A DNA stretch of 64,000 nt, taken from IMG/VR virus record IMGVR_UViG_3300024259_002152, positions 186,001-250,000 of that record. The stretch is one strand, 5' to 3'. Below the pieces are notes generated by a model that saw only the letters and a list, made by a program, of their open reading frames with translations, did not search any database and was not told where the DNA came from. The translations under genes were made by a program, and so were the position numbers. Positions 26,526 through 63,501 of the stretch are shown in pieces (within the stretch, counting starts at the first letter, position 1; each line of letters opens with the position of its first letter).

Positions 26526-26553
26526 TTGAAAGTGAAAATGAATACTTTATAAT
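26526..26553 (+). promoter_or_regulatory. Sigma70-type promoter, motif copy 1
   Basis: TTGAAA-GTGAAAATGAATACTT-TATAAT (16-nt spacer), intergenic. Confidence 0.7.
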
Positions 26554-26621
26554 GATAGTTGGTATGAAATGTAGAGATATTGTCCAAAAGTAAGCAGTAG
26601 CAGATAGGATGAAGCATAAAA

Positions 26622-27509
26622 GTGAAAGATGAACAATTATTAAATAATTCCCTCTTATATCCTGATTTTCTTTGTGAGTCAGGTAGCCATTTATATGGAA
26701 TGGTTACGCCTACATCAGATTATGATTTGAGGGGATTTGTATTTCCTCCATTTTCATATCTTGTTGGGATTAAGAAATTTGAGTGCCAAGAAATGGAAGG
26801 AGATAAGAAAATTTATAGTGCTGCTCATTTTCTTAGATTGGCAATGAAGGGAGATCCTCAATGTTCGGAAAGTTTTTTTGCAAATAAAGAGAATATTGTG
26901 CAATGTTCGGAATTGGGCAAAGAAATAATGGATCTAAAGGATGATATTATTAGTAATGCCATTTATGGAAGAATCATGGGATATAGTACAGGAGAATGGC
27001 GTAAGGCAATGGCGGTTAAATTAGTTTCGACTAAATTTAATAAAACTAAAAAAGAGATTATAAATGATGTGCGTAATCATTGGACTCTTAATAAAGAGAA
27101 TATGGATAGGATTATCGAAATTCTCGATTCCGTAGATAAGAAAAAATGTGTTTCTTCAATGACTGGTCTTGGGGCTAAAAGAAAGGCAGATATTGAGCAA
27201 TATGGTTTTTGCAGGAAGAGTGCTGCCCATTCGATTCGTCTTGTAAGGCAGTTGACAGAGCTTATGGAAACGGGAACGATGACATTTCCTCGCCCCGATA
27301 AGGATGTGCTTTTAGATATCAGGAACGGTAAATACACAAAAGAAGATATGGAAGTAATGCATGATGAATCTGTTGCCCAAGCAGAAAGAATGCGTGATAA
27401 GTCTGTCCTTCCTGATAGGCCTAATGAAAAAAGAGTTTGGAAAAAGTATTCAGAGTTAGTTGCAAATGTTATCCAGAAGGATGTAAAATTTTTGCAACTT
27501 GTACAATAA
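26622..27509 (+). CDS. DNA polymerase beta-superfamily nucleotidyltransferase (phage type)
   Basis: ESGSHLYGMVTPTSDYDLRG (GS...DxD), KSAAHSIRL, LLDIRNGKY. Confidence 0.85.
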   Translation: MKDEQLLNNSLLYPDFLCESGSHLYGMVTPTSDYDLRGFVFPPFSYLVGIKKFECQEMEGDKKIYSAAHFLRLAMKGDPQCSESFFANKENIVQCSELGKEIMDLKDDIISNAIYGRIMGYSTGEWRKAMAVKLVSTKFNKTKKEIINDVRNHWTLNKENMDRIIEILDSVDKKKCVSSMTGLGAKRKADIEQYGFCRKSAAHSIRLVRQLTELMETGTMTFPRPDKDVLLDIRNGKYTKEDMEVMHDESVAQAERMRDKSVLPDRPNEKRVWKKYSELVANVIQKDVKFLQLVQ

Positions 27510-27535
27510 TGTTGTTATTTTGTTAGGATGGTAAT

Positions 27536-27940
27536 ATGGAACAGAAGAGAAATTTCAGAGGATTAAAAAAATATGAATCTTTGTTGAAAACAATTTGTAT
27601 GGTAGATGATTATGGTCATTTACCCGAGGCGGAATGGGAGGGTTGTTTAGGGATAGCTTGTGTTATTTCTGTGATAGAAGGAGCGACTCCTAATCTATTT
27701 TCTTTGTCAAAACATCTAGATATTCCTCATTATAATATCAATCTACAAAATGCTTTTGAGAGATTGAGAATTAGCGGTATATTTAATGCTAGACATGATA
27801 TCAAAAATGATCCTTTATTAATTGGAAATGGAGTTGATGGCAAATGGAGAACTGCTGCTGAGGCAGAAAGGGGAGCGTGGTGCCATGTCTCAGGGGTTGC
27901 TGGGGGACTCATTGGTCTAGGAAAAACGCTTGAAAAGTGA
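27536..27940 (+). CDS. Hypothetical protein
   Basis: 134-aa ORF with protein-like composition; no family recognised. Confidence 0.55.
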   Translation: MEQKRNFRGLKKYESLLKTICMVDDYGHLPEAEWEGCLGIACVISVIEGATPNLFSLSKHLDIPHYNINLQNAFERLRISGIFNARHDIKNDPLLIGNGVDGKWRTAAEAERGAWCHVSGVAGGLIGLGKTLEK

Positions 27941-27957
27941 AAGTAAAGTAGTATAAT
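27930..27957 (+). promoter_or_regulatory. Sigma70-type promoter, motif copy 2
   Basis: TTGAAA-AGTGAAAGTAAAGTAG-TATAAT; overlaps the stop of the preceding gene. Confidence 0.75.
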
Positions 27958-27995
27958 AAGTAGTATATTAGTTGTTATTTTATTAGGAGAACCAT

Positions 27996-28211
27996 ATGAG
28001 AGTTCAAAAAAGAAGAGTTAATACGAAAAGACACACAATTGGCTGGAAAATTGGCGGAAAATGGGTATCGCGTAGAGATGCCTGGGACCTTGCTCGACAA
28101 GGGAGGGTCGAAGGGGTTGTTGCTTGTCGAGGGGAAAGTGGAGTATATATTCAATCACACCCTAATGCATCGACGAGACTTTATGACCTTGATGAGGTTG
28201 TAGACGCTTAG
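27996..28211 (+). CDS. Small DUF3892-like protein
   Basis: WVSRRDAWDLARQGRVEGV...YIQSHPN...LYDL; AGGAG SD. Confidence 0.55.
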   Translation: MRVQKRRVNTKRHTIGWKIGGKWVSRRDAWDLARQGRVEGVVACRGESGVYIQSHPNASTRLYDLDEVVDA

Positions 28212-28277
28212 AAGGTATAGGAAAATATTGTTTTTCATCCTCCTCCGTGGCATGGGCGTGTAAATTTTTACATTTAT

Positions 28278-33445: not shown

Positions 33446-34280
33446 AAATATAGCGACTATCATAAAGACAAAATATGGTAATAATCTTTATAAGATGAAT
33501 TTTATATTTTGTGTTCAAAAAGATGCTAATTCATATTTTATTTTCCAAGAAATTCAAGGAATGCCAATTAGAAGAATCGTTTATCATGAATCAAATAATT
33601 CAGTTACTTTTACAGCTAGTTGGTCAGCATGGGCTAATCCATTTGCTATAGTAGCAGATGCTAATTGTGAGCAAATAGAAAATTGGAAAGATGTATTAGA
33701 TAGAAGTAGACCATATAATTCTTATATAGATGTCGAAGGAGGGTTTAATAAACAAGAATGGAAATCAGTTGATAAGATAAATAGAACAGAAAAAAAGAAA
33801 CGCCATAAGCATAAGACAGATACTTTTGTTGAGTTTAGAGTTGATAGGATACAAAGAGCAATTTTTAATGAGTGGGGTTTTGAACTATATAGTCCTACTA
33901 TTAGCATGATAGGTTTCAAATCACGACATTCTTTTCCACATGAAGTTTTTGACGTGCCAGGAACTTCTGACGACGAATTTGACGATGATGGTCCTACATT
34001 AGATGAGAATGAAGTTTTTGCATATGTAACAACGTGGCAAGGAGGAACGTTTCGTATCACAGAATTTGAAAACAATTCTGACGAAATATCTCAAATATCA
34101 GCAGAATCTAATGCATTTTTCAATTATGATCTATCAAGCTATTGGGATATAAATGAGAGTGATGAAGAAAATGAGAAATTCGATGAAGAGATGGCAAGTG
34201 TGTTTCTTGATGAGAGAGAAGATGATGAAACTATTTTTGATGTTGGGCAGAAAAAAGTAAATTTATATTTTGACGATTAA
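33423..34280 (+). CDS. Hypothetical protein with acidic C-terminus
   Basis: Long ORF; ATG 33423 overlaps the upstream gene end. Confidence 0.55.
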   Translation: MIKLSDIKNIATIIKTKYGNNLYKMNFIFCVQKDANSYFIFQEIQGMPIRRIVYHESNNSVTFTASWSAWANPFAIVADANCEQIENWKDVLDRSRPYNSYIDVEGGFNKQEWKSVDKINRTEKKKRHKHKTDTFVEFRVDRIQRAIFNEWGFELYSPTISMIGFKSRHSFPHEVFDVPGTSDDEFDDDGPTLDENEVFAYVTTWQGGTFRITEFENNSDEISQISAESNAFFNYDLSSYWDINESDEENEKFDEEMASVFLDEREDDETIFDVGQKKVNLYFDD

Positions 34281-34301
34281 AAACTTATAGGAGTAAATAG
34301 T

Positions 34302-34835
34302 ATGAATGAATTAGAAGGTATCAGATTGTTTTTGAGCGGACCTATCGATCGGGTTAAAGATGATGGAGTTGGATGGAGAAAAGAATTTCAAGACAAATGT
34401 AAAAAATTACAATTGCCTTTTGATTTTTTCGACCCTTGTCATAAACCAAAAGGGATGGGGTCAGAAATAGGAGATGAAAAAATTAGAATACAGAATTTGA
34501 TGAAAAAAAGAAAATGGGAGCAAGCCCAATCTGAAGTTAAAGTATTCGGAAGATACGACTTAAGGATGGTAGATCTTAGTCATGTTCTTGTTCTTTATTG
34601 TGATATTGACGTCCACCTCTGTGGGTCGTATGAGGAATTCGTAACGGCAAAAAGGCAGCATAAGCCCTGTTTTGTTATTATGGGGGAAGGACAATCGAAA
34701 TATGATATCCCTTCATGGCTTATTCAGCATGTGGATGAAGATGAGGTGTTTAATAATGTAGATGAGTGTGTTGAGCACCTTAAACTGATACATGAAGGTA
34801 AAATAGTTCCTGATGATAGATGGGTGATAGTGTAG
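34302..34835 (+). CDS. Nucleoside 2-deoxyribosyltransferase/nucleotide hydrolase-like protein
   Basis: LFLSGPID, FFDP, YDLRMVDLSHVLV, GSYEEFVTA..QHKP. Confidence 0.72.
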   Translation: MNELEGIRLFLSGPIDRVKDDGVGWRKEFQDKCKKLQLPFDFFDPCHKPKGMGSEIGDEKIRIQNLMKKRKWEQAQSEVKVFGRYDLRMVDLSHVLVLYCDIDVHLCGSYEEFVTAKRQHKPCFVIMGEGQSKYDIPSWLIQHVDEDEVFNNVDECVEHLKLIHEGKIVPDDRWVIV

Positions 34836-34843
34836 ATTTGTAT

Positions 34844-34872
34844 TTGCAAAGTGAAAGTGAATGGATAATAAT
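34844..34872 (+). promoter_or_regulatory. Sigma70-type promoter, motif copy 3 (degenerate)
   Basis: TTGCAA-AGTGAAAGTGAATGGA-TAATAAT. Confidence 0.55.
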
Positions 34873-34924
34873 GATTGACAGAATGAAACGTGTCTTAAAA
34901 TAGATCAAACATAGGAGATTAAAC

Positions 34925-35374
34925 ATGGCACAAGAAAAGCCTAATTACGAAGTAAATGATGAGTTTAATAATATGGCAGTTCAACTTGTCGAAAAGTATG
35001 CAGAAAAGTTTGACAATATTGAAGTTGGCAAAGTTTGCTGTGTTAATTTAACGAACAAAGATCGTAAAGAAGTAGAAGGAGCAGTAGATCGAATATGGAA
35101 GCTCAAAGCAGTCAAGATGCCTGAAGCTATTCATAATCCTTTCGGGTGGTATGTGATCCTTCATTCCAATGATTGGGACGATATGAGCGACAAGCATAAA
35201 CTTGCCCTTGTAGCTGATGTTCTGCATGGAATACCAAATGAGACAGATAACGATGGTAGAGTTAATCCTTGTAACGTTAAGGGCTATCTTCCTGTCTTCG
35301 AGACCTTAGGAATCAAATATCTTGATGATCCTGATATTCCTCATCTTCTTGATGAAGATGTCGTATGGAAGTAG
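34925..35374 (+). CDS. Phage metallopeptidase-like (PhageMetallopep) protein with degenerate metal site
   Basis: WYVILHSNDWDDMSDKHKLALVADVLHGI matches the family pattern except that HELxH is replaced. Confidence 0.55.
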   Translation: MAQEKPNYEVNDEFNNMAVQLVEKYAEKFDNIEVGKVCCVNLTNKDRKEVEGAVDRIWKLKAVKMPEAIHNPFGWYVILHSNDWDDMSDKHKLALVADVLHGIPNETDNDGRVNPCNVKGYLPVFETLGIKYLDDPDIPHLLDEDVVWK

Positions 35375-35377
35375 ACT

Positions 35378-35596
35378 ATGTATAGAATAGATAAATTTTT
35401 ACAATACTACAATAGTCTCAAGGGTGTTGATATGGAAATCTCTCCAGGGGTTTGGGTCCATGCCCGACCCCTACCATTTTATTATAGTCTTTTCACAAAA
35501 GGATTTTGGAGAGAAAGAAAACAAAGAAAAAAAGATGCTAGAGCTGTCCTGAGGGGAGAAGCAATAGCAGTGACATGGAATTTAGATAAGGATTAA
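35378..35596 (+). CDS. Small hypothetical protein
   Basis: 72-aa ORF in operon spacing. Confidence 0.55.
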   Translation: MYRIDKFLQYYNSLKGVDMEISPGVWVHARPLPFYYSLFTKGFWRERKQRKKDARAVLRGEAIAVTWNLDKD

Positions 35597-35598
35597 AA

Positions 35599-36057
35599 AT
35601 GGCAAAGTTTCAATTATGGTCAAGAGATGAGTATGGACAAGGTAGCATTATAATGACCTCAGAAGATATAGATGAGGTTATTAAGAGAGGTAAGCAGGAA
35701 GTTACTGATCTTAATGTTCAAAATGCTTTAACTTCTACTGATAGAGAAAATAACTGGGAAGCATATTTTGTAAATGTCAAAACTTCGGCAAAACGTTCTC
35801 AAACAAAATATGCTTATGGATCAACTGATGTTCATACTAAGGATAGGGTTTATGCTATTGCAGATAGTGGTGTAAAATCTATTATACTTTCGGAAGTTCC
35901 GAAAGCAGTTGTTGAGATTTATCTTGGTAATATTTCTACGAAGAGAAAAGAGGAGAAAGATTGGATCGGGACAGATTTGAGAGCCAGACCAATTGACAAT
36001 GTAGATCATCCTGATTTACAAGGTAAGACATTGTTTTTTGTTAAGAAGGTTGGATAA
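35599..36057 (+). CDS. Hypothetical protein
   Basis: 152-aa ORF with SD, coupled to the next gene. Confidence 0.6.
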   Translation: MAKFQLWSRDEYGQGSIIMTSEDIDEVIKRGKQEVTDLNVQNALTSTDRENNWEAYFVNVKTSAKRSQTKYAYGSTDVHTKDRVYAIADSGVKSIILSEVPKAVVEIYLGNISTKRKEEKDWIGTDLRARPIDNVDHPDLQGKTLFFVKKVG

Positions 36058-36473
36058 TGGCAAAAAAATTTGATAGTGTAAAAGATAGTGGAGCGCGTGA
36101 GGAATTCTCTACAGGAGCCAGGAGAGATACGCAGGAAGGTAAGGGACGTTTTGACTTGTTGCCTATTAATGCGATGTTTCGGTTGTCTCGTCATTTTGAG
36201 AACGGAGCCGTGAAATATGGAGATTCAAATTGGCTCAAGGGTATACCCTTAAAGAGGTATTTAGATTCCCTATTAAGGCATACTTTCAAATTTGCGGGAG
36301 GTTTAGAAGGGGAAGATCATCTGTGTGCGATTATCTGGAACGCTTGTTGTTTATTGGAAACTCAAGAACTTATTAGACAAGGAAAATTGCCAAAAGAACT
36401 TGATAATTTGCCAGATCCCGTTTTGGACCCAAAGGAATTTAATGAGGAGATAAGAGATTCTGATTCCAAGTAA
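36057..36473 (+). CDS. dATP/dGTP diphosphohydrolase-domain protein (DUF5664)
   Basis: KDSGAREEFSTGARRD..GKGRFDLLP, GAVKYGDSNWLKGIP, YLDSLLRH, EDHL..IIWNA. Confidence 0.88.
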   Translation: MAKKFDSVKDSGAREEFSTGARRDTQEGKGRFDLLPINAMFRLSRHFENGAVKYGDSNWLKGIPLKRYLDSLLRHTFKFAGGLEGEDHLCAIIWNACCLLETQELIRQGKLPKELDNLPDPVLDPKEFNEEIRDSDSK

Positions 36474-36550
36474 TTAAAATGAAGGATTTTTTTCAATATA
36501 GTCGTTCAGCGATTAATAGGACGACGAAATCAAATAGAAAGGTTATGTAA

Positions 36551-36841
36551 ATGAAAAATTTAACTATCGGTATCGACGTTAATGGTATTGGAATAATAGA
36601 GATGTCTGTAATAGCTTTGCAGGTTTATGATAGGAAAGAAATAACAAAGGAACAATTGTCAAAAATTATCGAAATAGATTTTGATAAAGGGGAACGAACT
36701 GGCAAAGGTTATCCAGGAGATAGTGCCACACCATGCGCATTGTCTCATTTAGTAATACAACTGTATGATAGGGAGTTGATAACAAAAAACATTTTGTTAA
36801 AAATGCTATTTGGAATGGAAGCAGAGGTCCAAAATGATTAA
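36551..36841 (+). CDS. Hypothetical protein with internal duplicated motif
   Basis: LQVYDRKEITKEQL and IQLYDRELITKNIL recur. Confidence 0.55.
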   Translation: MKNLTIGIDVNGIGIIEMSVIALQVYDRKEITKEQLSKIIEIDFDKGERTGKGYPGDSATPCALSHLVIQLYDRELITKNILLKMLFGMEAEVQND

Positions 36842-37151
36842 AGTTAAAGAAGCAGAAGTATGTCTTTCAGAGACAACGGTTAGGGAATTATTAAGAGCAA
36901 TCGAAGAAGCGAAGAAGACTATTGTTTTCTCAGGAGAGATGAAACCCATGCCTGATGGGGATATGTCCACATATCAATATGAATTGGAGCAAAGAAAAAG
37001 AGGAAATATCATAGTCTCTTCTCCTCATGGAGATATAAAATTTAGAGTTGAGGTAGAAACCCTCCCTAATACTCAAGAAAGTTTAGGATACAAATTAGAA
37101 AAACCGAAAGAACTAGAAGAGTCTAATTGGTCTGATGTAAGTATTTATTGA
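36834..37151 (+). CDS. Hypothetical protein
   Basis: ORF coupled to the upstream gene; ATG 36834. Confidence 0.5.
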   Translation: MIKVKEAEVCLSETTVRELLRAIEEAKKTIVFSGEMKPMPDGDMSTYQYELEQRKRGNIIVSSPHGDIKFRVEVETLPNTQESLGYKLEKPKELEESNWSDVSIY

Positions 37152-37168
37152 AAGTGAAGGAATAAAAA

Positions 37169-37396
37169 ATGAAAGTTTGGATAAGCAGAGATAACATGGA
37201 TAGTGTAAGGGATATTATAAAAGTATGGGAAAGAAAACCCAACAAGACAAGCGATAGTTGCTTTTATGATTCAATTTCTAGTAGCTCAGGGTGGTTAATC
37301 ATGTCTGCGAATGATTTTAAGGAGAGGTTTGGTTTCCGTCCTCGCAAAGGAAGCTGTAAAGAATATAATCTAGTGCTGGCAGCCCTTCGTAGATAG
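37169..37396 (+). CDS. Small hypothetical protein
   Basis: 75-aa ORF, AAGGA SD. Confidence 0.55.
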   Translation: MKVWISRDNMDSVRDIIKVWERKPNKTSDSCFYDSISSSSGWLIMSANDFKERFGFRPRKGSCKEYNLVLAALRR

Positions 37397-37408
37397 AAGA
37401 TAATAAAA

Positions 37409-37828
37409 ATGACATTTAGTAAAACTCTATTAACAGAAATTCAACAAAAAGTTCATCCAAATTGTGTAATATGCAGTCAGAATAACCCAAAAGGATTAAA
37501 ATTAGATTTTAAATTATCAGATGATGGAAGTATTTCATCTATATTTAATTTTGGTAAAGAATACGAAGGGCATAGTGGTGTTTTACATGGGGGCATAATT
37601 TCAGCTATTTTAGATGGAGCCATGGGTAATTGTTTATTTGCTCATGGGCACGTAACTTACACAGCAGATTTTCGTTTACGTTTCAAACATGCGGTCCTTA
37701 TAGGTAAACCTTTAACAGCACATGCGTGGATCACCAAAGTTAGACCGCCTCTATATAAAACCAAAGCAGAAATTTATCAAGACACTATGATAAAAGTAAT
37801 TGCAACCGCTAAATTTATGGAGAAGTAA
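37409..37828 (+). CDS. PaaI-family thioesterase (HotDog fold)
   Basis: HPNCVICSQNNPKGL, GHSGVLHGGIISAILDGAMG, TADFRLRFK. Confidence 0.88.
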   Translation: MTFSKTLLTEIQQKVHPNCVICSQNNPKGLKLDFKLSDDGSISSIFNFGKEYEGHSGVLHGGIISAILDGAMGNCLFAHGHVTYTADFRLRFKHAVLIGKPLTAHAWITKVRPPLYKTKAEIYQDTMIKVIATAKFMEK

Positions 37829-38296: not shown

Positions 38297-39406
38297 GTGA
38301 AAGTTGAAACCCCCTTATCTCTCAAGTATCGTCCTAAAAAATTATCTCAGGTAGTAGGGCAACCAGTAGTAGTTAGAGCATTTACTAATGCTTTCAAAAT
38401 AAATAATCTGCATCATGCTTATATTCTAGCAGGTCAATTTGGTTGCGGAAAAACGACAGTTGCTAGAATTGTTGCGGCAACTGAAAATTGTTTAGAGAAT
38501 AAAAAAGATCCATGTGGTAAGTGTAATAATTGTCAAGAAATTTTTGCTGGGAAATCCTATGAAGTTCTTGAGATAGATGCGGGAAGTGAAGGTAAGGTTG
38601 ATAATATCAGAGCATTACACAAATCTTTACATCAATGTCCCGTAGAATGCAAAACAAAATATGTTATTATTGATGAGGCACATTCTTTAACAGGTTCAGC
38701 AGCAGAAGCGTCTTTAAAGATGATAGAGGAACCTCCTCCTATGGTTAGATTTATCTTAGCCACTACTGAGCCACAGGCGTTTAAGGAAACCATTCATAGT
38801 CGTTGCATTATGTGGAGTTTCAACAAGGTTGGTAGGGCTGATATATTCAGTCATTTGCAAAATATTTCTCAGCAGGAGCAAATTGGTTGTGATGATAAAA
38901 CTCTTCAATTAATTGCCAGATATTCCAAAGGGTCAGTGAGAAATTCTTTACAACATCTTCAGAAAATTATGAATTATGTGGGAGATGATTCAATAACATA
39001 TGAATCTGCGGTAGAAGCTCTTGGAGTGATAGATGATGTATTATATTTTGATCTTTTCGATGGCATTATAGCAAAAGATGCCATGAAATGCTTTATGACT
39101 ATTAACAAGATATTTTGCGATGGTAAAGAAGCTAAATTGGTTATAGATGGAGTTTATGAGCATTTGAATAATTTGCTGGTTACGAGGACATGTCGAAAAG
39201 ATCTAGATTCTTTTGATTTTACACAGGAAGAAGCTAAGAGATATATACATCAAAACTCTACAATAGCTAAGAGTGGTGGAGATGATATACTAAGAATGAT
39301 GAACCTATTAAGCAATGTCTCATTTGGGGTAGAGTATAGTTTAAATCCAGCACAATTGCTGAATAAGTTTGCGGTAGAATCTATCCGTATGTTTGCTAAA
39401 AGATAG
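38297..39406 (+). CDS. dnaX: DNA polymerase III gamma/tau-like clamp-loader ATPase (gamma-length)
   Basis: KYRP...VVGQ, HAYILAGQFGCGKTT, PCGKCNNC, EIDAGS, IIDEAH, FILATTE, IHSRC. Confidence 0.92.
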   Translation: MKVETPLSLKYRPKKLSQVVGQPVVVRAFTNAFKINNLHHAYILAGQFGCGKTTVARIVAATENCLENKKDPCGKCNNCQEIFAGKSYEVLEIDAGSEGKVDNIRALHKSLHQCPVECKTKYVIIDEAHSLTGSAAEASLKMIEEPPPMVRFILATTEPQAFKETIHSRCIMWSFNKVGRADIFSHLQNISQQEQIGCDDKTLQLIARYSKGSVRNSLQHLQKIMNYVGDDSITYESAVEALGVIDDVLYFDLFDGIIAKDAMKCFMTINKIFCDGKEAKLVIDGVYEHLNNLLVTRTCRKDLDSFDFTQEEAKRYIHQNSTIAKSGGDDILRMMNLLSNVSFGVEYSLNPAQLLNKFAVESIRMFAKR

Positions 39407-39427: not shown

Positions 39428-39474
39428 TTTCAATCATATGTCGATATAAATGTGTGATTTATATATGATTGAAA
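39428..39474 (+). promoter_or_regulatory. Inverted repeat/hairpin abutting the sigma-factor SD
   Basis: TTTCAATCATAT (39428-39439) / ATATGATTGAAA (39463-39474) is a perfect 12-bp IR; inner ATAAAT/ATTTAT stem; contains TCGATATAAA. Confidence 0.6.
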
Positions 39475-39483
39475 GGAGTTCAT

Positions 39484-40203
39484 ATGGGTAAACGCAGACC
39501 CGTTAAGCGGATCTTTGGCCCACTTGAAAAACTAGAATATGAAGATTTAGTAGATGTTGTAAGAGGTAGATCGAGAACTAAAAGGAAAAATAACGCTTAT
39601 AATGAGATAGAGAAAAGAATAAAAGTCAAAGTATTTTATATTACAAGGCAATTTTATATTCCTGGTCTTAATTTTGATGATATATTGCAAGAAGCTTTGT
39701 TTGCTTTAAGATTTAAAGCTATTCCTGATTATGATAAAGATAAAGGACATGGTGATCGACCTTATCCTTTTGACAAATTCGCTATGCTTTGTATCAGGAG
39801 GCATCTATCAACTTTATTAAAAAGTAGTTTTCGTAATAAAGAGAAGGCCCTAAATACTAGTTTTTCTTTGGATCAAGATAGAAGTACCCACGATGACGAA
39901 AATTTATATTTAGTAGATATTCTTTCTGTCACAAAAGGTTCGTTAGTTGATAAGGTTGGACAGCAAGAGTATTATCGTAATTTGATAGAGAGATTATATA
40001 AAAGACTCTCCAAGTTGGAGAAAAATGTCTTTGTTTTGTATACTTGTAGATATTCATATGATGAAATAACTGATAAAATTAATAAGTTTTATAAGTCCCG
40101 AGGTAGAAAAAGAAAAGTAAATGTTAAAAGTGTGGACAACGCTTTGAGTCGAATTAAAATAAAAGCTAAAGAGATTTTTGATAAATATGATGGAGAGATA
40201 TAG
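39484..40203 (+). CDS. Sigma-70 family (SigH-like) RNA polymerase sigma factor
   Basis: FYIPGLNFDDILQEAL, FAMLCIRRHLSTLLK...KEKALN.S.SLD, SYDEI, KSVDNALSRIK; AGGAG SD before ATG 39484. Confidence 0.85.
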   Translation: MGKRRPVKRIFGPLEKLEYEDLVDVVRGRSRTKRKNNAYNEIEKRIKVKVFYITRQFYIPGLNFDDILQEALFALRFKAIPDYDKDKGHGDRPYPFDKFAMLCIRRHLSTLLKSSFRNKEKALNTSFSLDQDRSTHDDENLYLVDILSVTKGSLVDKVGQQEYYRNLIERLYKRLSKLEKNVFVLYTCRYSYDEITDKINKFYKSRGRKRKVNVKSVDNALSRIKIKAKEIFDKYDGEI

Positions 40204-40238: not shown

Positions 40239-40266
40239 TTGAAAAGTGAAAACAATCCCATATAAT
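40239..40266 (+). promoter_or_regulatory. Sigma70-type promoter, motif copy 4
   Basis: TTGAAA-AGTGAAAACAATCCCA-TATAAT. Confidence 0.75.
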
Positions 40267-40308
40267 AAAGTAGTAAGAATTGTAGATATTTTCCACAAGG
40301 AGTAAAGT

Positions 40309-41616
40309 ATGATTTTCGAAGTTAATAGAGAAGAATTCACAAGGGCTATTAAACCCGCTGTAGAGATTGCAACCAAAAACACACTCAAGGATTTCAAATA
40401 TGAGAATTTATTAACGATAAAAGCTGAACAGGATCAGGTTGTTTTGGTTTCTTATGGAGGCACATTAAGTATTGTCGCTCCTATATCAGGAAATAATTTT
40501 GGAGCACTAGATTATAGTTGCGAAGAAGAAGGGCAAACTACTGTTTATGCTGATGACTTATTGACATTTATGCAATCTCTTCCTAAAAGCTACGACAAAG
40601 TAAAGATTTCATTAGTGTCTAATCAGCTTAAATTATCTTCCGCTTCAAAGAAAACTGACGGCAAGAAGGCTAGTTCAGAACGATCTATGCCTACGGTGAC
40701 TGATATTGTTCGTCTTCCAAAAATTGGGACAACTTTTGACCAAGATATTGAATTGGATAGAGAGGTTTTTGTAAATGGTATTGATAGCGTCCTGTTTGCT
40801 CCAGCATACGAAGAAAAATATTTTTCTTATATGTGTATGTTATTTGAAGCAAGTTCTGGCACAGATCAAGAGATGAGATTTTCAGCAGGTTCAGGAGGAA
40901 GGTTTGCGATTAAATCTGTTAAAGGCAAGAATATAGTGCTGAATCAGAATGAAGCGAAGATGATTTTTCCAAAGAACAGTCTTTCTTCTATATTTAAGAT
41001 TTTATCAAGCGCAACAGAATCTTCCATTCGTATTAAATCTATAGGCGTAGATCAAACAAAAAATATTTCTGAGCAAATTCTGGTTGAGTGTGATGGAATG
41101 ACTATATGTGTATTTGGATTAGAGCATTTTACTAAATATCCTGATTTAAGTAAAATTTTAGCACATCAATATTCTAATAGAGTTTATAGTAGTTTGGAAG
41201 ATTGGCAGTCTATTGAGAAGACAATTGAGGGAACACGACACAGATGGAATGATAGTATTCATAATACGGAGATCATCATTGAAGAGAGTGATGAAGTTTT
41301 TAAAGTAACTCCTAAAACTCCTCATGCGAGTCCTACATTTATTGGAATGGTAGATACAAATGATTGTATTATCAAGGGTGATAAGATATGGTTCTGTTGT
41401 AATTCTGATTACCTGAGAGAGATGGTTGTTCAAGGTGGGGGTAAGGGTCGTATTCAGTTGAATTTTGAAAGTCAGTCGATATTGGAAGGGATAACAGATG
41501 ACAAACAGGCTCAGAAAATGATGAAACCAGTCCTGGTCAAATTTCCAGAAAATGTTGATGACGCCAAAAATACTGTTGATAACTTTTATATGTTCTTCTC
41601 AATTTCTACTAAATAA
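40309..41616 (+). CDS. dnaN: Divergent DNA polymerase III beta sliding clamp
   Basis: MIFEVNREEF N-terminus, KYPDLSKI and CNSDYL motifs at DnaN-like positions, size and context next to dnaX. Confidence 0.65.
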   Translation: MIFEVNREEFTRAIKPAVEIATKNTLKDFKYENLLTIKAEQDQVVLVSYGGTLSIVAPISGNNFGALDYSCEEEGQTTVYADDLLTFMQSLPKSYDKVKISLVSNQLKLSSASKKTDGKKASSERSMPTVTDIVRLPKIGTTFDQDIELDREVFVNGIDSVLFAPAYEEKYFSYMCMLFEASSGTDQEMRFSAGSGGRFAIKSVKGKNIVLNQNEAKMIFPKNSLSSIFKILSSATESSIRIKSIGVDQTKNISEQILVECDGMTICVFGLEHFTKYPDLSKILAHQYSNRVYSSLEDWQSIEKTIEGTRHRWNDSIHNTEIIIEESDEVFKVTPKTPHASPTFIGMVDTNDCIIKGDKIWFCCNSDYLREMVVQGGGKGRIQLNFESQSILEGITDDKQAQKMMKPVLVKFPENVDDAKNTVDNFYMFFSISTK

Positions 41617-41635
41617 CGTTGTAATGTGATTTGAA

Positions 41636-42808: not shown

Positions 42809-43080
42809 TGGAAGAAATTTATAAAAGTGTACTACTATTGATCCATTCTCTAACTCAATTGTCTGGAACGACTTACAAGTATAAAGAGGAGCCGAATGAG
42901 GAGAATGGGGAAAAAATAGTTACAATAGTAGATAAATGTGAAAATAAGTTCTTGAAAGTGAAAGAAGAAATAGTTAGAATGGTTCAAGAAGTAGAAGATG
43001 GTCAAAAAACAGAAGAGATAGAAGAAACAGAAGAGATTGAGACAATCCCTACAGAACAAGGTTTTTTAATAAAGGAATAA
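42808..43080 (+). CDS. Acidic hypothetical protein
   Basis: 90-aa ORF, coupled start. Confidence 0.5.
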   Translation: MEEIYKSVLLLIHSLTQLSGTTYKYKEEPNEENGEKIVTIVDKCENKFLKVKEEIVRMVQEVEDGQKTEEIEETEEIETIPTEQGFLIKE

Positions 43081-43086
43081 CATATC

Positions 43087-59509: not shown

Positions 59510-59537
59510 TTGAAAAGTGAAAGTGTAGTGGTATAAT
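59510..59537 (+). promoter_or_regulatory. Sigma70-type promoter, motif copy 5
   Basis: TTGAAA-AGTGAAAGTGTAGTGG-TATAAT with an AT-rich upstream tract. Confidence 0.78.
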
Positions 59538-59572: not shown

Positions 59573-59625
59573 TAGTAAGATAGTTAGTTTAGTTTAGTCT
59601 AGTTTAGTTTAGTAAGGAGTTACAA
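59573..59625 (+). repeat. (T)TTAG tandem-repeat leader running into the SD
   Basis: TAG TTAG TTTAG TTTAG TCTAG TTTAG TTTAG TAAGGAGTTACAA-ATG. Confidence 0.9.
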
Positions 59626-60243
59626 ATGAAAAAAAACAAGGCGGAATTAGTGTTTATTGTGGACCGTTCCGGCTCCATGATGTCAATTGCTTCTGATATG
59701 CAGGGAGCAATCAAGTCAGTTCTATCAGACCAAAAGAAAAACCTCAAAGGTGATATAAATGTGACCTTTGTACGTTTTGACTCTGAATACGAGGAAGTAT
59801 TCAGTGGTCGATCTATCAATGATGTTTCTGAAACGGATTTAGAAATTAATCCAAGAGGAATGACATCTTTGTTGGATGCAATGGGAAAAACTCTTAATAC
59901 TTTTGAAAGAAGATTTTCTGAAACAGATGAGAAGAATAGGCCTAAGAGGGTTTTATTCCTTATTATTACTGATGGACAAGAAAATAATAGCAAAGAGTAT
60001 TCGAGAGATAAAGTTTTTGGCATGATTAAAACTTTGGAAAGAGATCACGAATGGGGATTTACTTTTATTGGTGCTAACCAAGATGCTATTTCTGAAGGTA
60101 GTAGTATTGGTGTAGCAAGAGGAAAATCTCTTAATTATGCAGCTTCGACGAAGGGAGTTAGGTGTATGGCACGATCTGTTAGTAATTTTACAGCAGATTA
60201 TCTTGAGAGTGGTGATGCAAGTTACTCTGACGGTGATGAGTAA
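59626..60243 (+). CDS. von Willebrand factor A domain protein
   Basis: VDRSGSM (DxSxS MIDAS), PRGMTSLLDA, ITDGQENNSKEY, FTFIGANQDA. Confidence 0.9.
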   Translation: MKKNKAELVFIVDRSGSMMSIASDMQGAIKSVLSDQKKNLKGDINVTFVRFDSEYEEVFSGRSINDVSETDLEINPRGMTSLLDAMGKTLNTFERRFSETDEKNRPKRVLFLIITDGQENNSKEYSRDKVFGMIKTLERDHEWGFTFIGANQDAISEGSSIGVARGKSLNYAASTKGVRCMARSVSNFTADYLESGDASYSDGDE

Positions 60244-60245
60244 TT

Positions 60246-60283
60246 TTTAGTTTAGTTTAGTTTAGTTTAGTAAGGAGTTACAA
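60246..60283 (+). repeat. (TTTAG)5 leader plus identical TAAGGAGTTACAA SD block
   Basis: Shares 29 bp AGTTTAGTTTAGTAAGGAGTTACAAATGA with 59601-59629. Confidence 0.9.
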
Positions 60284-61153
60284 ATGAGTTATGATCAGAA
60301 AATCCAGTCCGCTCGTAAAGTCATTGACGAGCATAATGCAAATGCTGACAATCAAATCAATTTTGAGGAATTTACCAAAAAGCTTATTAATTTGGGAGGT
60401 TCTTCAGAAGAATCTCTAAAAGCAGTGAGTTGGGAAGATTTACAAGATTGTGGACTTCCTAAAATTATTGCTAGGAGATTAACATTTCTCTTCAGGCAAG
60501 ATTCCGACAATGAGGGAGGTAAATCTACTTATGTCTCTGAAAAGAAAGTTGGAACACTTTCTTATAGGGAGTTAGTAGAACGCTACAATCCAAAAGATGT
60601 TAAAAATCCTGTGGGCAAAAGATTAAAAGATCTTTCGGATAACAAGAAGTTTATTGTTTTCGATGATAATAGTAAAGTTATTATTGATGAAACAATAAGG
60701 TTGCTGGAAGATATTGTTAATGGGTTGCCTGAAGTAGAAACGGCTTTTGTGAATAAAAGACCTCTTCAAACCTATAGCGTTGGAGAGCGTCCTGATTTTT
60801 ATGCAGAAGAAAATCCGATTTATCCTGGGAGAGCATTACGTTCTAATGAAACGTGCGATCAAACAGGGCGTTCTTGGCAAGGGGTTTCTATAGAAATCCG
60901 TCAATTACTATATTTGGCTATTGACACAGATGAATTTGTCATTTCGTCTGTATCGGATGCTCACGATATCTTAGATAAAGTTTTATCAAAAGAGTGCTCT
61001 TTTGATAGGTTGAGAGGAAGATATCCTGAAGCATCTAAGGCTTTTGATGAGGCTAGTAAAATCGGGACACTTCCTCTTCTGAAAATCAAAATAGGGGATC
61101 ACGGAAGTGCAGAAAAAGGTAATAATCCTTTTGGTAGGAACACTATCTATTAA
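60284..61153 (+). CDS. Hypothetical protein, possible SAM/HhH-like helical motif
   Basis: SWEDLQDCGLPKIIARRL. Confidence 0.55.
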   Translation: MSYDQKIQSARKVIDEHNANADNQINFEEFTKKLINLGGSSEESLKAVSWEDLQDCGLPKIIARRLTFLFRQDSDNEGGKSTYVSEKKVGTLSYRELVERYNPKDVKNPVGKRLKDLSDNKKFIVFDDNSKVIIDETIRLLEDIVNGLPEVETAFVNKRPLQTYSVGERPDFYAEENPIYPGRALRSNETCDQTGRSWQGVSIEIRQLLYLAIDTDEFVISSVSDAHDILDKVLSKECSFDRLRGRYPEASKAFDEASKIGTLPLLKIKIGDHGSAEKGNNPFGRNTIY

Positions 61154-61164
61154 TATTAATTATG

Positions 61165-61195
61165 GGTGGGCAGCTTAGGTTGCCCACCTTTATTT
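61165..61195 (+). terminator. Intrinsic terminator-like hairpin with TTAG loop
   Basis: GGTGGGCAGC-[TTAG]-GTTGCCCACC-TTTATTT. Confidence 0.7.
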
Positions 61196-61207
61196 AGGAG
61201 ATATAAT

Positions 61208-62467
61208 ATGTCACAAGAAATGTCAGTAAAACAAGATTTAAAATGTATTTTTAATATGCCTGAGCAATTAAATAGCTCGTTTGATAGAGATCAAGAGGAA
61301 TTTCATAGTCTACCTCCTCATGCTCCCGTAGATGTTTATCCTGTAGATGAATATGAAAGTTGCCCCGCAAATTGGACACATGGTTCTGATGTGGCAAGTA
61401 GTTATTTTGTTGGAGTAAAAGAAAAACATGGCATGTGGTTAGATTTTAATGAGTGTTTTTATCATACTCATGATGTCGCGATTGTTATTTCAATTCAAGG
61501 TATTAATCCAATAACAGGACAAAAGATGGTAGCAGAAAAAGCTCTAAAGTTGGAGCAATATCATAAAAAATGTCCTATTCATAATGTTGATTATAAACAA
61601 GATAGATATTGTGAGAAGTGTGGGTTCAAATGGCCAGGACAAAATTATCTTGCCACCACAGGAACACCTGAAATGATGTTGTGGTTAGATGGTTTTAGAA
61701 CTCCAGAAGGAACAGTAAGGCAATACATTTTTACAGAAGATGAAATCAGGGGAGTGGCTTCTCAATTAATTGGTAAAGAAAGAGTATTTGCCATAGGTAT
61801 TGCTTATTATCTGAGTAAAAATAAAAAACCTTATACCCTACAACGTCCTGAAGAAAGAGTATTTACAGATAGTTATGCAGGACGTAAGTTTTTTAGTCCT
61901 ATGCATACCTCGGGGAATTGGAGTAAGGCTGCTCGCATCGGTGCGAGTGGATGTGATTCTAAGTCCTCGGGTTCTGATATAAAGATGGAGGCACTTGATC
62001 TATCTGATGAAATATCCATGCTTTTTGATGATTCTCCGAGTTATACAGAATCTTTAGGTGTAGATGATTCTGATATGATGATAGGAGCTTCAGATAATGA
62101 TGATTTATCGACCAACGGATTATTGAAGGGGATAATTACCCCTGATGCGGGAGATGATGGAGATAGAGCTACGGTTTGTACTGTGAACGGTTCGGCAATG
62201 CCTTCTTCCTCTACTCCTACTTCGAGTTCTGCTTTGAGACAAAGAAAGTCCATTACTCCTGTCAAGCAATTAGAGATAGGCGCAGGAGCATTAATACAAC
62301 AACGTGTTTATGATGATCCTAAGGTATTGACTTATTGGGAAGAAAAACCTGCTGGTATGATTTATATCAATTACTGCGATGAAGAAACAAAGAAACGAAT
62401 TTTAGATGCTGGTAGAAGAGCAGATGAAAAAGACGGATTTATGCAGGATATTAAAGTAGGTGGATGA
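61208..62467 (+). CDS. Conserved-looking hypothetical protein with a low-complexity middle
   Basis: GMWLDF...QGINPITG, WLDGFRTPEGTVRQY, IGAGALIQQRVYDD...W; AGGAG SD before ATG 61208. Confidence 0.6.
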   Translation: MSQEMSVKQDLKCIFNMPEQLNSSFDRDQEEFHSLPPHAPVDVYPVDEYESCPANWTHGSDVASSYFVGVKEKHGMWLDFNECFYHTHDVAIVISIQGINPITGQKMVAEKALKLEQYHKKCPIHNVDYKQDRYCEKCGFKWPGQNYLATTGTPEMMLWLDGFRTPEGTVRQYIFTEDEIRGVASQLIGKERVFAIGIAYYLSKNKKPYTLQRPEERVFTDSYAGRKFFSPMHTSGNWSKAARIGASGCDSKSSGSDIKMEALDLSDEISMLFDDSPSYTESLGVDDSDMMIGASDNDDLSTNGLLKGIITPDAGDDGDRATVCTVNGSAMPSSSTPTSSSALRQRKSITPVKQLEIGAGALIQQRVYDDPKVLTYWEEKPAGMIYINYCDEETKKRILDAGRRADEKDGFMQDIKVGG

Positions 62468-62494
62468 TAGGGCTCAATAGAGAGAGCAGGACAT

Positions 62495-62537
62495 AAAGGG
62501 ACTATTTTTTACATAATGTGGGAATAGTCCCTTTTAT
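62495..62537. terminator. Bidirectional terminator between convergent genes
   Basis: AAAGGGACTATT (62495-62506) / AATAGTCCCTTT (62523-62534). Confidence 0.72.
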
Positions 62538-62947
62538 ATTGATACAGATTTTAAAGTTGCAAAAGTTAAAGCTCTTGAGAGATCTTTTGTTTGTATTTCA
62601 TCTTTGATAAGATAGTCTTTGATACCTAGTAGCCATGCTTTTCTACCAACGGAGTAATCTTCTAATCCTGTTAAGACAATAACTGGTGTGTTCTGGTTGT
62701 GTTTTTCTAGGTGCTCTAATGTAGTTTCTACTGTTTCTATCCCATCTGTTTCGGGCAATCCTAAGTCAAGGATGATAGCATCGAAAGTAGTCGAGGCCAT
62801 TTTTTTAAGTCCATCTTGTAGGCAATTTGATTCATCACAAACCATTACTCTTCCGTTCATTTGTTTAAGATGATTAATGATTAGATCTCTATCTTCTTTA
62901 CTGTCATCTATTATTAATATCTTCATTTTACTCAATGTCCTTTCCAT
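62534..62947 (-). CDS. Stand-alone response regulator receiver domain
   Basis: ILIIDDSKED, ILDLGLPETDG, PVIVLTG, DYLIK. Confidence 0.88.
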   Translation of the reverse strand: MERTLSKMKILIIDDSKEDRDLIINHLKQMNGRVMVCDESNCLQDGLKKMASTTFDAIILDLGLPETDGIETVETTLEHLEKHNQNTPVIVLTGLEDYSVGRKAWLLGIKDYLIKDEIQTKDLSRALTFATLKSVSI

Positions 62948-63398
62948 CTATAAAGCAAAAATTGTTATTATTGGGCAATTCATTTGATTTAAACCAATAC
63001 TTTCCTATAAGACCAACTTTATCATATAACTCTTGAATATCAAAAGTTTTAGTGATATATGAGTTGGCATGTAATTTGTATGTTTCTTCTATGTCAGGAG
63101 GAAAATCAGAAGTGGTGAATATAATAACTGGTATTACTTTATAGGCGTCATCAGTTTTAATAATTTTTAATATTTCTTTGCCATTAATATTTGGTATATT
63201 TATATCTAAAATAATGATATGGGGAGTTGGAGCAGACTCAAAGTTGCCTTTTTTATAGAGAAAATTTAAAGCATCGCTTCCATTACTAATATTTATCACA
63301 TCTAATGAAAGATTTGGGATCTTAGATAGAGCTTGTCTAAGTAGCTCAAAATCGGCTTCATTATCCTCTATAGATAATATTGTAAATCTCTTAGCCAT
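62928..63398 (-). CDS. Stand-alone Rcp1-type response regulator
   Basis: IEDNEAD, ILDINIPNINGKEIL, IPVIIFTTS...DIEETYKLHANSYITK. Confidence 0.92.
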   Translation of the reverse strand: MAKRFTILSIEDNEADFELLRQALSKIPNLSLDVINISNGSDALNFLYKKGNFESAPTPHIIILDINIPNINGKEILKIIKTDDAYKVIPVIIFTTSDFPPDIEETYKLHANSYITKTFDIQELYDKVGLIGKYWFKSNELPNNNNFCFIDGKDIE

Positions 63399-63473
63399 AT
63401 TTTTAGATTCCTAATTCATATGGGAACGAATACTTATAGATTTCAGTATTTTTACTTGGAATCCTTTTTTTAT

Positions 63474-63501
63474 TTGAAAGTGAAAATAAGTTGATTATAA
63501 T
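63474..63501 (+). promoter_or_regulatory. Sigma70-type promoter, motif copy 6
   Basis: TTGAAA-GTGAAAATAAGTTGAT-TATAAT. Confidence 0.75.

What the first reader, a model, noticed from the sequence alone, without database searches (positions are those of the whole stretch)
26526..63501. Six-copy promoter motif TTG(A/C)AA-(A)GTGAAA-...-TATAAT defines a regulon
Seen at 26526, 27930, 34844 (degenerate), 40239, 59510 and 63474, in or at the edge of intergenic gaps, with a 16-nt spacer in the five clean copies and an extra conserved GTGAAA right after the -35. Downstream genes are the nucleotidyltransferase, DUF3892-like, metallopeptidase-like, clamp, vWA operon and thyA. None occurs in the glycan cluster or the Cys/Ser cassette. 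Established: this resembles the sigma70/sigmaA consensus TTGACA-17-TATAAT. Inference: early promoters for host RNA polymerase carrying an element-specific activator or repressor box.
Basis: partly seen in the sequence, partly recalled or inferred. Interest (0 to 1): 0.6.

Follow-up and report, generated by a model that had tools for sequence, protein, structure and literature searches.

The report
Boxed promoter class of marine megaphage
The repeated motif is real: it is a conserved class of bacterial-type promoters, carrying an extra AAGTGAAA box, that heads the replication, nucleotide, tRNA and sigma-factor operons of an uncultivated marine giant phage and its relatives.

Summary
The window is part of a 350,866-bp IMG/VR phage contig from seawater. 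It has no RNA polymerase gene but several sigma-factor genes.

- **Counts.** TTGAAA(A)GTGAAA-N9/10-TATAAT occurs 5 times exactly in the window (0.1 expected). Genome-wide there are 14 exact copies and 28 with up to 2 mismatches, against 0 and 0.4 in simulations. All lie on the gene strand and almost all are intergenic.
- **Conservation.** Two syntenic relatives (298 kb, 548 kb) carry 24 and 37 copies, many at orthologous positions. The motif is conserved there while flanks and spacer have diverged.
- **Promoter features.** The -10 varies as sigma-70-type -10 elements do. TTG sits 16-17 bp upstream. An ATG lies exactly 6 nt after the -10 in 12 of 89 sites, including a leaderless DNA polymerase gene.
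- **Genes served.** Helicase, DNA polymerase, SSB, clamp, ThyA, tRNAs, and every phage sigma gene found.

I therefore read these as host-holoenzyme promoters at the top of a sigma cascade. The GTGA core of the box is the most invariant part, so it is a selected protein-binding site. Whether it activates or represses is unresolved. No MotA/AsiA homologues were found and no RNA data exist. This is a new variant of a known kind.

The parts
26526..26553 (+). Class-1 promoter: TTGAAA-GTGAAA-N10-TATAAT. Predicted start near 26560. Drives the RlaP-type nucleotidyltransferase gene at 26622-27509.
   Evidence: Sites at the orthologous position in G001 (124586) and G002 (236507).
27930..27957 (+). Class-1 promoter: TTGAAA-A-GTGAAA-N9-TATAAT. 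It overlaps the last codons of ORF 27536-27940 and drives a 71-aa ORF (27996-28211) and larger ORFs after it.
   Evidence: Orthologous sites at G001 126036 and G002 237974. DUF3892 match only faint.
34844..34872 (+). Degenerate class-1 promoter: TTGCAA-A-GTGAAA-N10-AATAAT, 17-nt spacer. It heads a run of + strand genes from the metallopeptidase-like ORF (34925) to the clamp loader (38297-39406) and the SigH-type sigma gene.
   Evidence: Orthologous site at G002 246167. No + strand terminator predicted between 34872 and 39469.
39469..40203 (+). Phage sigma factor of the SigH type. The likely start is residue 6, at 39484. It is preceded at 39440-39447 by GTCGATAT, which resembles a sigma-28/SigD -10.
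   Evidence: NCBIfam PRK08295/SigH models, E 6e-24 to 4e-20, below equivalog cut-offs. Pfam Sigma70_r2 weak. Atlas neighbours are viral and Bacillota sigma clusters. GTCGATAT is conserved before the orthologues in G001 and G002.
40239..40266 (+). Class-1 promoter: TTGAAA-A-GTGAAA-N9-TATAAT. Drives the beta-clamp-like gene at 40309-41616.
   Evidence: Orthologous site at G001 140286.
42952..42980 (+). Probable internal class-1 promoter: TTGAAA-GTGAAA-N11-TAGAAT. It lies inside the 3' end of ORF 42808-43080 and upstream of the gene at 43087.
   Evidence: Present at the same place in G001 (142987) and G002 (253503). Its flanks are coding, so conservation is less telling here.
59510..59537 (+). 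Class-1 promoter: TTGAAA-A-GTGAAA-N9-TATAAT with TG at -15/-14. Drives the vWA operon (59626-62467).
   Evidence: Orthologous sites at G001 156707 and G002 269305/541244.
63474..63501 (+). Class-1 promoter: TTGAAA-GTGAAA-N10-TATAAT. It sits in a divergent gap after - strand genes and drives the ThyA-like gene starting at 63540.
   Evidence: Orthologous sites at G001 160627 and G002 272568.

Best explanation
**What it is.** The motif is a clade-conserved class of strong bacterial-type promoters.
- The -35 is TTGAAA, or TTGACA in a subclass.
- The spacer is 16-17 bp and the -10 is TATAAT.
- Transcription starts about 7 nt after the -10.

**What it drives.** It heads the non-structural operons of an uncultivated marine giant phage: replication, nucleotide metabolism, tRNAs, assorted enzymes and the phage's own sigma-factor genes.

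**Who reads it.** The phage has no RNA polymerase of its own. These promoters are read by host core polymerase with a primary-type sigma, which at the start of infection is the host's housekeeping sigma. That places the class at the top of a cascade. The phage sigmas it produces (SigH-type, minimal RpoD/ECF-like; FliA-type and SigW-like in the complete relative) would then read the other promoter classes.

**The box.** AA(A)GTGAAA(G) begins in the 3' half of the -35 and ends 9-11 bp before the -10 (5-7 bp in the TTGACA subclass). It is a separate asymmetric protein-binding site kept by selection. Most likely a phage-encoded regulator docks there to switch the whole class together.

**Shown:** occurrence, strand and position, geometry, conservation, gene content.

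**Inferred:** host sigma use, timing, and that a regulator binds the box. The sign of regulation is open. I lean slightly to a shut-off or class-marking site over a strict activator, because the box position varies by half a helical turn.
For: **Occurrence**
- 5 exact copies in the window against 0.1 expected.
- 14/21/28 sites in the contig against 0/0/0.37 simulated, and none on the other strand.
- 13 of 14 exact sites are intergenic, while only 5.7% of the contig is intergenic.

**Relatives**
- A scan of 2.9 million viral contigs finds multi-copy use only in G001 (298 kb) and G002 (548 kb, 100% complete). Single copies occur in fragments G003 and G005 of further relatives.
- G001 and G002 are syntenic with the window's contig. 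Orthologous proteins are 64% and 53% identical.
- About 17 of 28 sites have a counterpart at the orthologous position.
- Motif columns are 0.7-1.0 identical there. Flanks, the rest of the spacer and the downstream sequence are 0.3-0.5 identical.

**Promoter character**
- Mismatches in the -10 fall on positions 3 and 5, never on A2 and rarely on T6. This is the sigma-70-family pattern.
- TTG is present in 44 of 53 box-plus-(-10) sites.
- TG at -15/-14 occurs in 25 of 89 sites.
- ATG lies exactly 6 nt after the -10 in 12 of 89 sites, against 0-6 at any other offset. These include the DNA polymerase gene in G000 and G001.

**No phage polymerase.** PF00562, PF00623 and PF00940 give no match in G000-G002. 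The PF00940 search rang in none of the 14 control genomes, so that blank does not show absence.

**Genes served.** Helicase, DNA polymerase, SSB, clamp, ThyA, peptide deformylase and glycosyltransferases lie directly behind sites. The tRNA array lies further downstream of one.

**Sigma genes.** All lie behind class-1 or class-1b sites in all three genomes.

**Box**
- The GTGA core has 1 mismatch in 356 positions. It is more invariant than the -35 or the -10.
- It occupies offsets 9-11 from the -10, or 5-7 in the TTGACA subclass.

Against: - There is no transcript evidence. Every run holding this DNA is a seawater DNA metagenome.
- The host is unknown, so its housekeeping promoter consensus is assumed.
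- Timing rests on cascade logic alone. A second abundant class (TTCCAGACAA) is clustered among small ORFs and tRNAs. By analogy with T4 and SPO1 host-takeover regions it could be the true immediate-early class, which would make this class 'middle'.
- The minimal sigma just behind a perfect site has an RpoD-like region 2. It could itself read these promoters.
- Sites with a perfect box but weak -35 or -10 are commoner than the reverse. That fits a positive recognition element as well as an operator.
- No candidate box-binding protein was identified.
- Pfam may miss very divergent phage polymerases.
Confidence: 0.6

Rival explanations
1. The class is read by a phage sigma rather than the host sigma. 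The minimal 183-aa RpoD-like sigma encoded just behind a perfect site would replace the host sigma. It would recognise TATAAT plus a bipartite upstream element (TTGAAA + GTGAAA) and amplify its own synthesis. Host sigma would give only the first spark.
For: - The sigma gene follows a perfect site in G000, G001 and G002.
- Its region 2 scores best against RpoD/RpoS models and its region 4 against Sigma70_r4.
- The box is the most invariant part of the motif.
Against: - The box lies 9-11 bp from the -10, or 5-7 bp in the TTGACA subclass. That is too close and too variable for a sigma region-4 contact, which needs about 16-18 bp.
- The -35 and -10 already match the housekeeping consensus.
- Box-less canonical TTGACA-17-TATAAT promoters also exist in these genomes.
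Confidence: 0.2
2. These are middle promoters of a T4-like sigma-appropriation type. A phage activator binds the box and recruits a modified host holoenzyme. The clustered TTCCAGACAA class would be the true early class.
For: - The box is an asymmetric 8-10 bp element about 10 bp upstream of the -10. From textbook knowledge, the T4 MotA box lies about 12 bp upstream.
- The genes served (replication, nucleotide metabolism, tRNAs) and the copy number (about 28) resemble T4 middle promoters.
- Sites with a perfect box and a weak -35 exist.
- The TTCCAGACAA class is clustered at about one per kb among small ORFs.
Against: - No MotA (PF09158) or AsiA (PF09010) homologue was found in G000-G002.
- TTG at -35 is retained in 44 of 53 sites, unlike T4 middle promoters.
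- Box position varies by up to 6 bp between subclasses.
- All phage sigma genes lie behind this class.
Confidence: 0.15
3. The box has no function of its own. The copies share it because a promoter cassette was duplicated around the genome.
For: Some promoter classes in this genome do travel with duplicated leaders. Examples are class-2 sites with identical downstream sequence and the repeated TTTAG leader.
Against: - The spacer after the box and both flanks are unrelated between copies.
- The box is kept at orthologous sites across genomes whose proteins are only 53-64% identical.
- GTGA has 1 mismatch in 356 positions.
Confidence: 0.03

Closest known systems
Strong early promoters of large lytic phages read by host housekeeping holoenzyme (T4 early, SPO1 early, T5)
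   Same: Near-consensus -35 and -10, an A/T-rich stretch upstream, and many copies on the gene strand. They carry extra class-specific conserved positions beyond the host consensus. They serve genes expressed before the structural genes, and the phage lacks its own polymerase.
   Different: Here the extra conservation is a discrete AA(A)GTGAAA box inside the spacer. It is more invariant than the -35 or -10 and tolerates several offsets. Timing is not measured. (The comparison rests on textbook knowledge, not on a tool result.)
T4 middle promoters (MotA box plus sigma-70 -10; MotA/AsiA sigma appropriation)
   Same: An asymmetric box about 10-12 bp upstream of a sigma-70-type -10. About 30 copies lie in front of replication, nucleotide and tRNA genes.
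   Different: The -35 TTG is retained. No MotA or AsiA homologue was found. The box sequence is unrelated and sits a few bp closer to the -10.
SPO1-type sigma cascade (phage sigmas gp28, gp33/34 redirect host core polymerase)
   Same: There is no phage polymerase but several phage sigma genes. Distinct promoter classes exist. The sigma genes are transcribed from housekeeping-type promoters.
   Different: The sigmas here are of SigH, FliA/WhiG, ECF and minimal RpoD-like types, not gp28 or gp34 relatives. Matching each sigma to a class is tentative.

Membership tests
Sigma-70/sigma-A (housekeeping) type promoter | -35 element TTGACA-like | tested here: met
   TTGAAA in class 1a and TTGACA in class 1b. 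TTG is present in 44 of 53 box-plus-(-10) intergenic sites.
Sigma-70/sigma-A (housekeeping) type promoter | Spacer of 17 +/- 1 bp | tested here: met
   16 bp in 52 sites and 17 bp in 37 of 89.
Sigma-70/sigma-A (housekeeping) type promoter | -10 TATAAT with A2 and T6 most conserved | tested here: met
   Mismatches per position over 89 sites are 4, 0, 16, 5, 11, 2. The scan itself allowed any position to vary.
Sigma-70/sigma-A (housekeeping) type promoter | Transcription starts 6-8 nt after the -10 and depends on the housekeeping sigma | not testable with these tools
   No RNA runs hold this DNA. The only support is indirect: ATG exactly 6 nt after the -10 in 12 of 89 sites, including long ORFs.
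T4 middle promoter / MotA-AsiA sigma appropriation | Activator box about 12 bp upstream of the -10 | tested here: inconclusive
   The box ends 9-11 bp (class 1a) or 5-7 bp (class 1b) before the -10. The layout is similar and the sequence unrelated.
T4 middle promoter / MotA-AsiA sigma appropriation | No conserved -35 element | tested here: not met
   TTG is retained at -35 in 44 of 53 sites.
T4 middle promoter / MotA-AsiA sigma appropriation | MotA and AsiA genes present | tested here: not met
   PF09158 and PF09010 give no match at E up to 1 in G000, G001 and G002. Divergent analogues cannot be excluded.
Dimeric-repressor operator overlapping a promoter (lambda-like) | Palindromic site of about 14-20 bp | tested here: not met
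   The conserved block is asymmetric, AA(A)GTGAAA(G), and always in one orientation. The rest of the spacer is not conserved.

The most novel reading that the evidence does not exclude
The AAGTGAAA box is the docking site of a so far unrecognised phage factor. This could be a non-MotA appropriator or a domain of a minimal phage sigma. It would let the phage keep its own housekeeping-type promoters running, or shut them all off, independently of host promoters. That would be a new promoter architecture at the top of a four-tier sigma cascade in a half-megabase marine phage that has no polymerase of its own.
Probability: 0.25. Interest if true: 0.7.

Novelty: new variant of a known kind. Interest (0 to 1): 0.5.

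Why it matters
Gene regulation in uncultivated giant phages is almost unknown. This work gives a concrete, conserved promoter grammar for a marine clade of about 0.3-0.55 Mb genomes.

- It defines transcription units.
- It shows the clade relies on host core polymerase plus a set of its own sigma factors.
- It singles out a short box that can be tested with synthetic DNA and purified proteins, without culturing the phage.
- If the box proves to be a new kind of class switch on housekeeping-type promoters, it would add to the few known ways phages re-programme host polymerase.

If not, it remains a useful annotation feature and an ordinary strong-promoter class.

Tried and rejected
- **Nucleotide search of cultured phages:** no match for window 40300-48000.
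- **Protein searches of cultured phages:** only about 34% identity for the clamp loader and nothing for the small sigma. There is no cultured relative to borrow transcript data from.
- **Sequencing runs:** only seawater DNA metagenomes, with no RNA.
- **Literature:** searching the box sequence returned only interferon-element papers. The phage G and Mar_Mega_1 papers give no curated promoter motif.
- **Bacterial genomes:** the exact-motif scan gave scattered hits, nearly all one per genome, and no host lead. Two marine single-cell Bacteroidetes contigs with a hit share no sequence with the phage.
- **G004** (128 kb) carried one hit but is not a real relative.
- **Distant relatives through DNA polymerase:** The search for related loci returned only G001 and G002.
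- **Iterative position-weight matrix:** a first attempt over-fitted and found only the seeds. I replaced it with mismatch counting.
- **Rfam:** only tRNAs.
- **Terminator scan:** no terminator directly upstream of the window's sites.
- **Box as an overlapping second -35:** rejected, because the position where its -10 would lie is not conserved.
- **Host identification:** not achieved. The SigH-type sigma has Bacillota-like neighbours, but this is only a hint.


Full report
**1. Where the window lies**

The window is bases 186001-250000 of a single 350,866-bp contig.
- It is an IMG/VR virus record, linear, and 73% complete by CheckV.
- It has 33% G+C, and about 90% of its ORFs are on the + strand.
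- All public runs holding this DNA are seawater metagenomes. None is RNA.
- No cultured phage is close. A nucleotide search found nothing, and the clamp loader is at most about 34% identical to anything in the phage collection.

**2. The observation**

*In the window*
- TTG(A/C)AA-N16-TATAAT occurs five times, at 26526, 27930, 40239, 59510 and 63474, all on the + strand. Shuffles give 0.10 expected.
- Each copy carries GTGAAA directly after the -35, or after one extra A.
- A generic sigma-70 scan of 25-64 kb does not find more promoter-like sites than shuffles overall. Its only 11/12 matches are these five.
- The 'degenerate' copy at 34844 is TTGCAA-A-GTGAAA-N10-AATAAT.
- All six sit in or at the edge of ORF gaps.
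- A seventh likely copy at 42952 lies inside the end of a small ORF. A hit at 48927 is doubtful.

*In the whole contig*
- I scored 18 positions: TTGAAA, an optional A plus GTGAAA, and TATAAT at 16 or 17 bp.
- There are 14, 21 and 28 sites at up to 0, 1 and 2 mismatches on the + strand and none on the - strand.
- Sixty second-order Markov simulations of the + strand gave 0, 0 and 0.37.
- Thirteen of the 14 exact sites are intergenic, although only 5.7% of the contig is intergenic.

DUF3892 is only a faint match.

**3. Relatives**

- I scanned 2.9 million viral contigs for one exact variant. Multiple copies occurred on only two other contigs: G001 (297,710 bp) and G002 (547,943 bp, 100% complete).
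- Both are syntenic with the window's contig. They are about 75% and 69% identical at the nucleotide level where alignable. They share 223 and 262 reciprocal-best proteins at 64% and 53% identity.
- They carry 24 and 37 sites, almost all on the gene strand.
- Fragments G003 and G005, at about 55% amino-acid identity, also carry the motif.
- About 17 of the 28 G000 sites have a site at the orthologous position in G001, G002 or both.
- In 43 pairwise comparisons anchored on the -10, the -35/box block and the -10 are 0.7-1.0 identical. The upstream flank, the spacer between box and -10, and the transcribed side are 0.3-0.5 identical, close to background for this composition.
- The motif is therefore kept by selection and is not a relic of duplication.
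The composite motif is not a general bacterial habit.

**4. Anatomy**

*Geometry over 89 sites*

| Spacing | bp | Sites |
|---|---|---|
| -35 to -10 | 16 | 52 |
| -35 to -10 | 17 | 37 |
| box to -10 | 10 | 57 |
| box to -10 | 9 | 22 |
| box to -10 | 11 | 10 |

*Mismatches*

| Element | Total | Per position |
|---|---|---|
| -35 (TTGAAA) | 24 | 5, 2, 5, 11, 1, 0 |
| Box (GTGAAA) | 16 | 1, 0, 0, 0, 9, 6 |
| -10 (TATAAT) | 38 | 4, 0, 16, 5, 11, 2 |

- The -10 pattern is that of sigma-70-family -10 elements.
- Within the box, GTGA has a single mismatch in 356 positions.
- The last two A's of the -35 hexamer are also nearly invariant. The conserved block is really AA(A)GTGAAA(G), overlapping the 3' half of the -35.
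- TG at -15/-14 occurs in 25 of 89 sites.
- TTG is present in 44 of 53 intergenic box-plus-(-10) sites.
- An A- or T-rich stretch lies just upstream of the -35.

*Subclass 1b.* It has a canonical TTGACA, then 2-4 nt, then AGTGAAA or AGTAGAA, then 5-7 nt, then TATAAT. A handful of box-less canonical TTGACA-17-TATAAT sites also exist.

**5. Indirect evidence for the start site**

- ATG lies exactly 6 nt after the -10 in 12 of 89 sites. Every other offset from 0 to 29 has 0-6. The A of that ATG is the seventh base, the textbook +1, and A is the commonest base there (54%).
- Four of these ATGs open long ORFs: DNA polymerase in G000 and G001, a glycosyltransferase, and a 119-aa ORF present in both genomes. 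Those genes would be leaderless.
- In G002 the polymerase gene instead has a 24-nt leader with a ribosome-binding site.

**6. What the class drives**

- Directly downstream lie a helicase operon, DNA polymerase, SSB, the clamp, ThyA, peptide deformylase with a radical-SAM enzyme, glycosyltransferases, the RlaP-type nucleotidyltransferase, AAA ATPases and the vWA operon. One site lies about 740 nt upstream of the 31-tRNA array.
- The block of very large ORFs without family matches at 25-92 kb is probably the virion module. It has a single site, at 20507, just upstream of the block and none within it.

**7. Who reads it**

*Polymerase.* No beta (PF00562), beta-prime (PF00623) or T7-type (PF00940) polymerase domain is found in G000, G001 or the complete G002. 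The PF00940 search rang in no control genome, so that blank is weak evidence.

*Sigma genes*
- G000 has a 183-aa minimal sigma with regions 2 and 4. Its region 2 is most like RpoD.
- A NUDIX gene follows it, and then a 238-aa ORF with an ECF-like region 4.
- This operon starts 32 nt after the perfect site at 266754. G001 and G002 have the same arrangement.
- The window's ORF 39469-40203 is a SigH-type sigma (NCBIfam E 6e-24). It lies in the gene run headed by the 34844 site, with no predicted + strand terminator in between.
- G002 also has a FliA/WhiG-type sigma (E 9e-49) behind a degenerate boxed site, and a SigW-like sigma behind a class-1b site.

*Inference.* Every phage sigma gene found lies behind this class. 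The class must therefore be readable before any of them is made, which means by host holoenzyme. This is an inference, not a measurement, and it is my only basis for calling the class early.

**8. Other promoter classes** (outside the finding, but they frame it)

- **Class 2:** aaaaTTCCAGACAA-yG-TTT...TAnanT. It has 23, 51 and about 32 copies in G000, G001 and G002. It is confined to regions of 30-60 kb with about one site per kb, among small ORFs, the tRNAs, an RNA ligase, helicase- and recombinase-like genes.
- **GTCGATAT(A)** with TAAA/TAAT about 15 bp upstream. It resembles the sigma-28/SigD consensus (from textbook knowledge). It is conserved in front of the SigH-type sigma gene in all three genomes.
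- **AAAGGATTT-N14-15-GAATAT.** It resembles the SigH consensus and lies in front of several ORFs in the putative virion region.

The last two are tentative. Together they suggest a cascade: boxed housekeeping-type promoters, then phage sigmas, then later classes.

**9. The box**

- It is asymmetric and always in one orientation. It is the most invariant part of the motif and is specific to this clade.
- It is too close to the -10 to be a -35 element for any sigma-70-family protein.
- It is not palindromic, so it is not a classic dimeric operator.
- Its layout recalls the T4 MotA box. However, the -35 is kept and no MotA or AsiA homologue is found.
- Its position shifts by up to 6 bp between subclasses. 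That fits steric shut-off or class marking better than a rigid activator contact.
- On the other hand, sites with a perfect box and a weak -35 or -10 outnumber the reverse. That fits a positive element.
- I cannot decide the sign. I can say it is a selected protein-binding site. No candidate binding protein was identified.

**10. Verdict**

- The timing and the role of the box remain inferences.
- The scale was underestimated. This is one promoter class, with about 28 copies per 351 kb, conserved across a clade of marine giant phages.
- It is a new variant of a known kind. Interest is moderate. It would rise if the box proved to be a new way of controlling housekeeping-type promoters.

No read-laying was done because no RNA run exists.

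Noticed in passing
G000 285,804-349,559 (loci L105-L108); also G001 244-283 kb and G002 (reverse strand) 361-390 kb: A second promoter-like class, aaaaTTCCAGACAA-yG-TTT...TAnanT. It has 23, 51 and about 32 copies in the three genomes, nearly all on the gene strand. It is clustered at about one per kb among small ORFs, tRNAs, an RNA ligase and helicase/recombinase-like genes. Some copies share identical leaders. It could be the true immediate-early class.
   Followed up: partly
window 39440-39447; also window 44012 (G000 230012), G000 8481 and 151432: GTCGATAT(A) lies 20-60 nt before start codons, with TAAA/TAAT about 15 bp upstream. It resembles the sigma-28/SigD -10 (GCCGATAT). It is conserved in front of the SigH-type sigma gene in G000, G001 and G002, and G002 encodes a FliA/WhiG-type sigma. 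Some copies are part of AT-rich inverted repeats.
   Followed up: partly
G000 19135, 25172, 52630, 95821, 262825, 346606: AAAGGATTT-N14-15-GAATAT starts right after the stop codon of the preceding gene, in front of several ORFs including a 1002-aa one. It resembles the SigH promoter consensus and would fit the SigH-type sigma in the window. Enrichment is modest: 6 of 31 intergenic in G000 and 17 of 59 in G002.
   Followed up: partly
window 59586-59625 and 60245-60285: Two consecutive genes of the vWA operon are preceded by a (TTTAG)n pentamer repeat followed by the identical leader TAAGGAGTTACAAATG. This looks like a duplicated translation-initiation cassette.
   Followed up: no
G000 116507-116544; G001 33644-37685: The DNA polymerase gene starts with ATG exactly 6 nt after the -10, so it appears leaderless in G000 and G001, but it has a 24-nt leader with a ribosome-binding site in G002. 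In G001 the polymerase reading frame is split into 347-aa and 615-aa parts by two inserted ORFs.
   Followed up: no
G000 327,905-338,016: An array of 31 tRNA genes lies on the + strand. A class-1 site at 327162 and a box-less TTGACA-17-TATAAT at 327274 lie upstream, and four class-2 sites lie inside the array.
   Followed up: partly
G000 283301, 304853, 340836; G001 214433, 221521, 259862, 263048; G002 (reverse strand) 318029, 326989: Subclass 1b: canonical TTGACA, 2-4 nt, AGTGAAA or AGTAGAA, 5-7 nt, TATAAT. A few canonical promoters without any box also exist (for example G001 68603 and G002 434066).
   Followed up: partly
G001 200240 and 257046: An inverted copy of the box (CACTTTTCACTTTTCAA or CTTTCACTTTT) lies 10-25 nt upstream of the promoter's own box. 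The pair could form a hairpin or a two-site arrangement. It was seen at only these two sites.
   Followed up: no
G000 35547-36452: A 301-aa ORF with an HNH nuclease domain and a weak match to the IscB RNA-guided endonuclease model (E 2e-7, far below cut-off).
   Followed up: no
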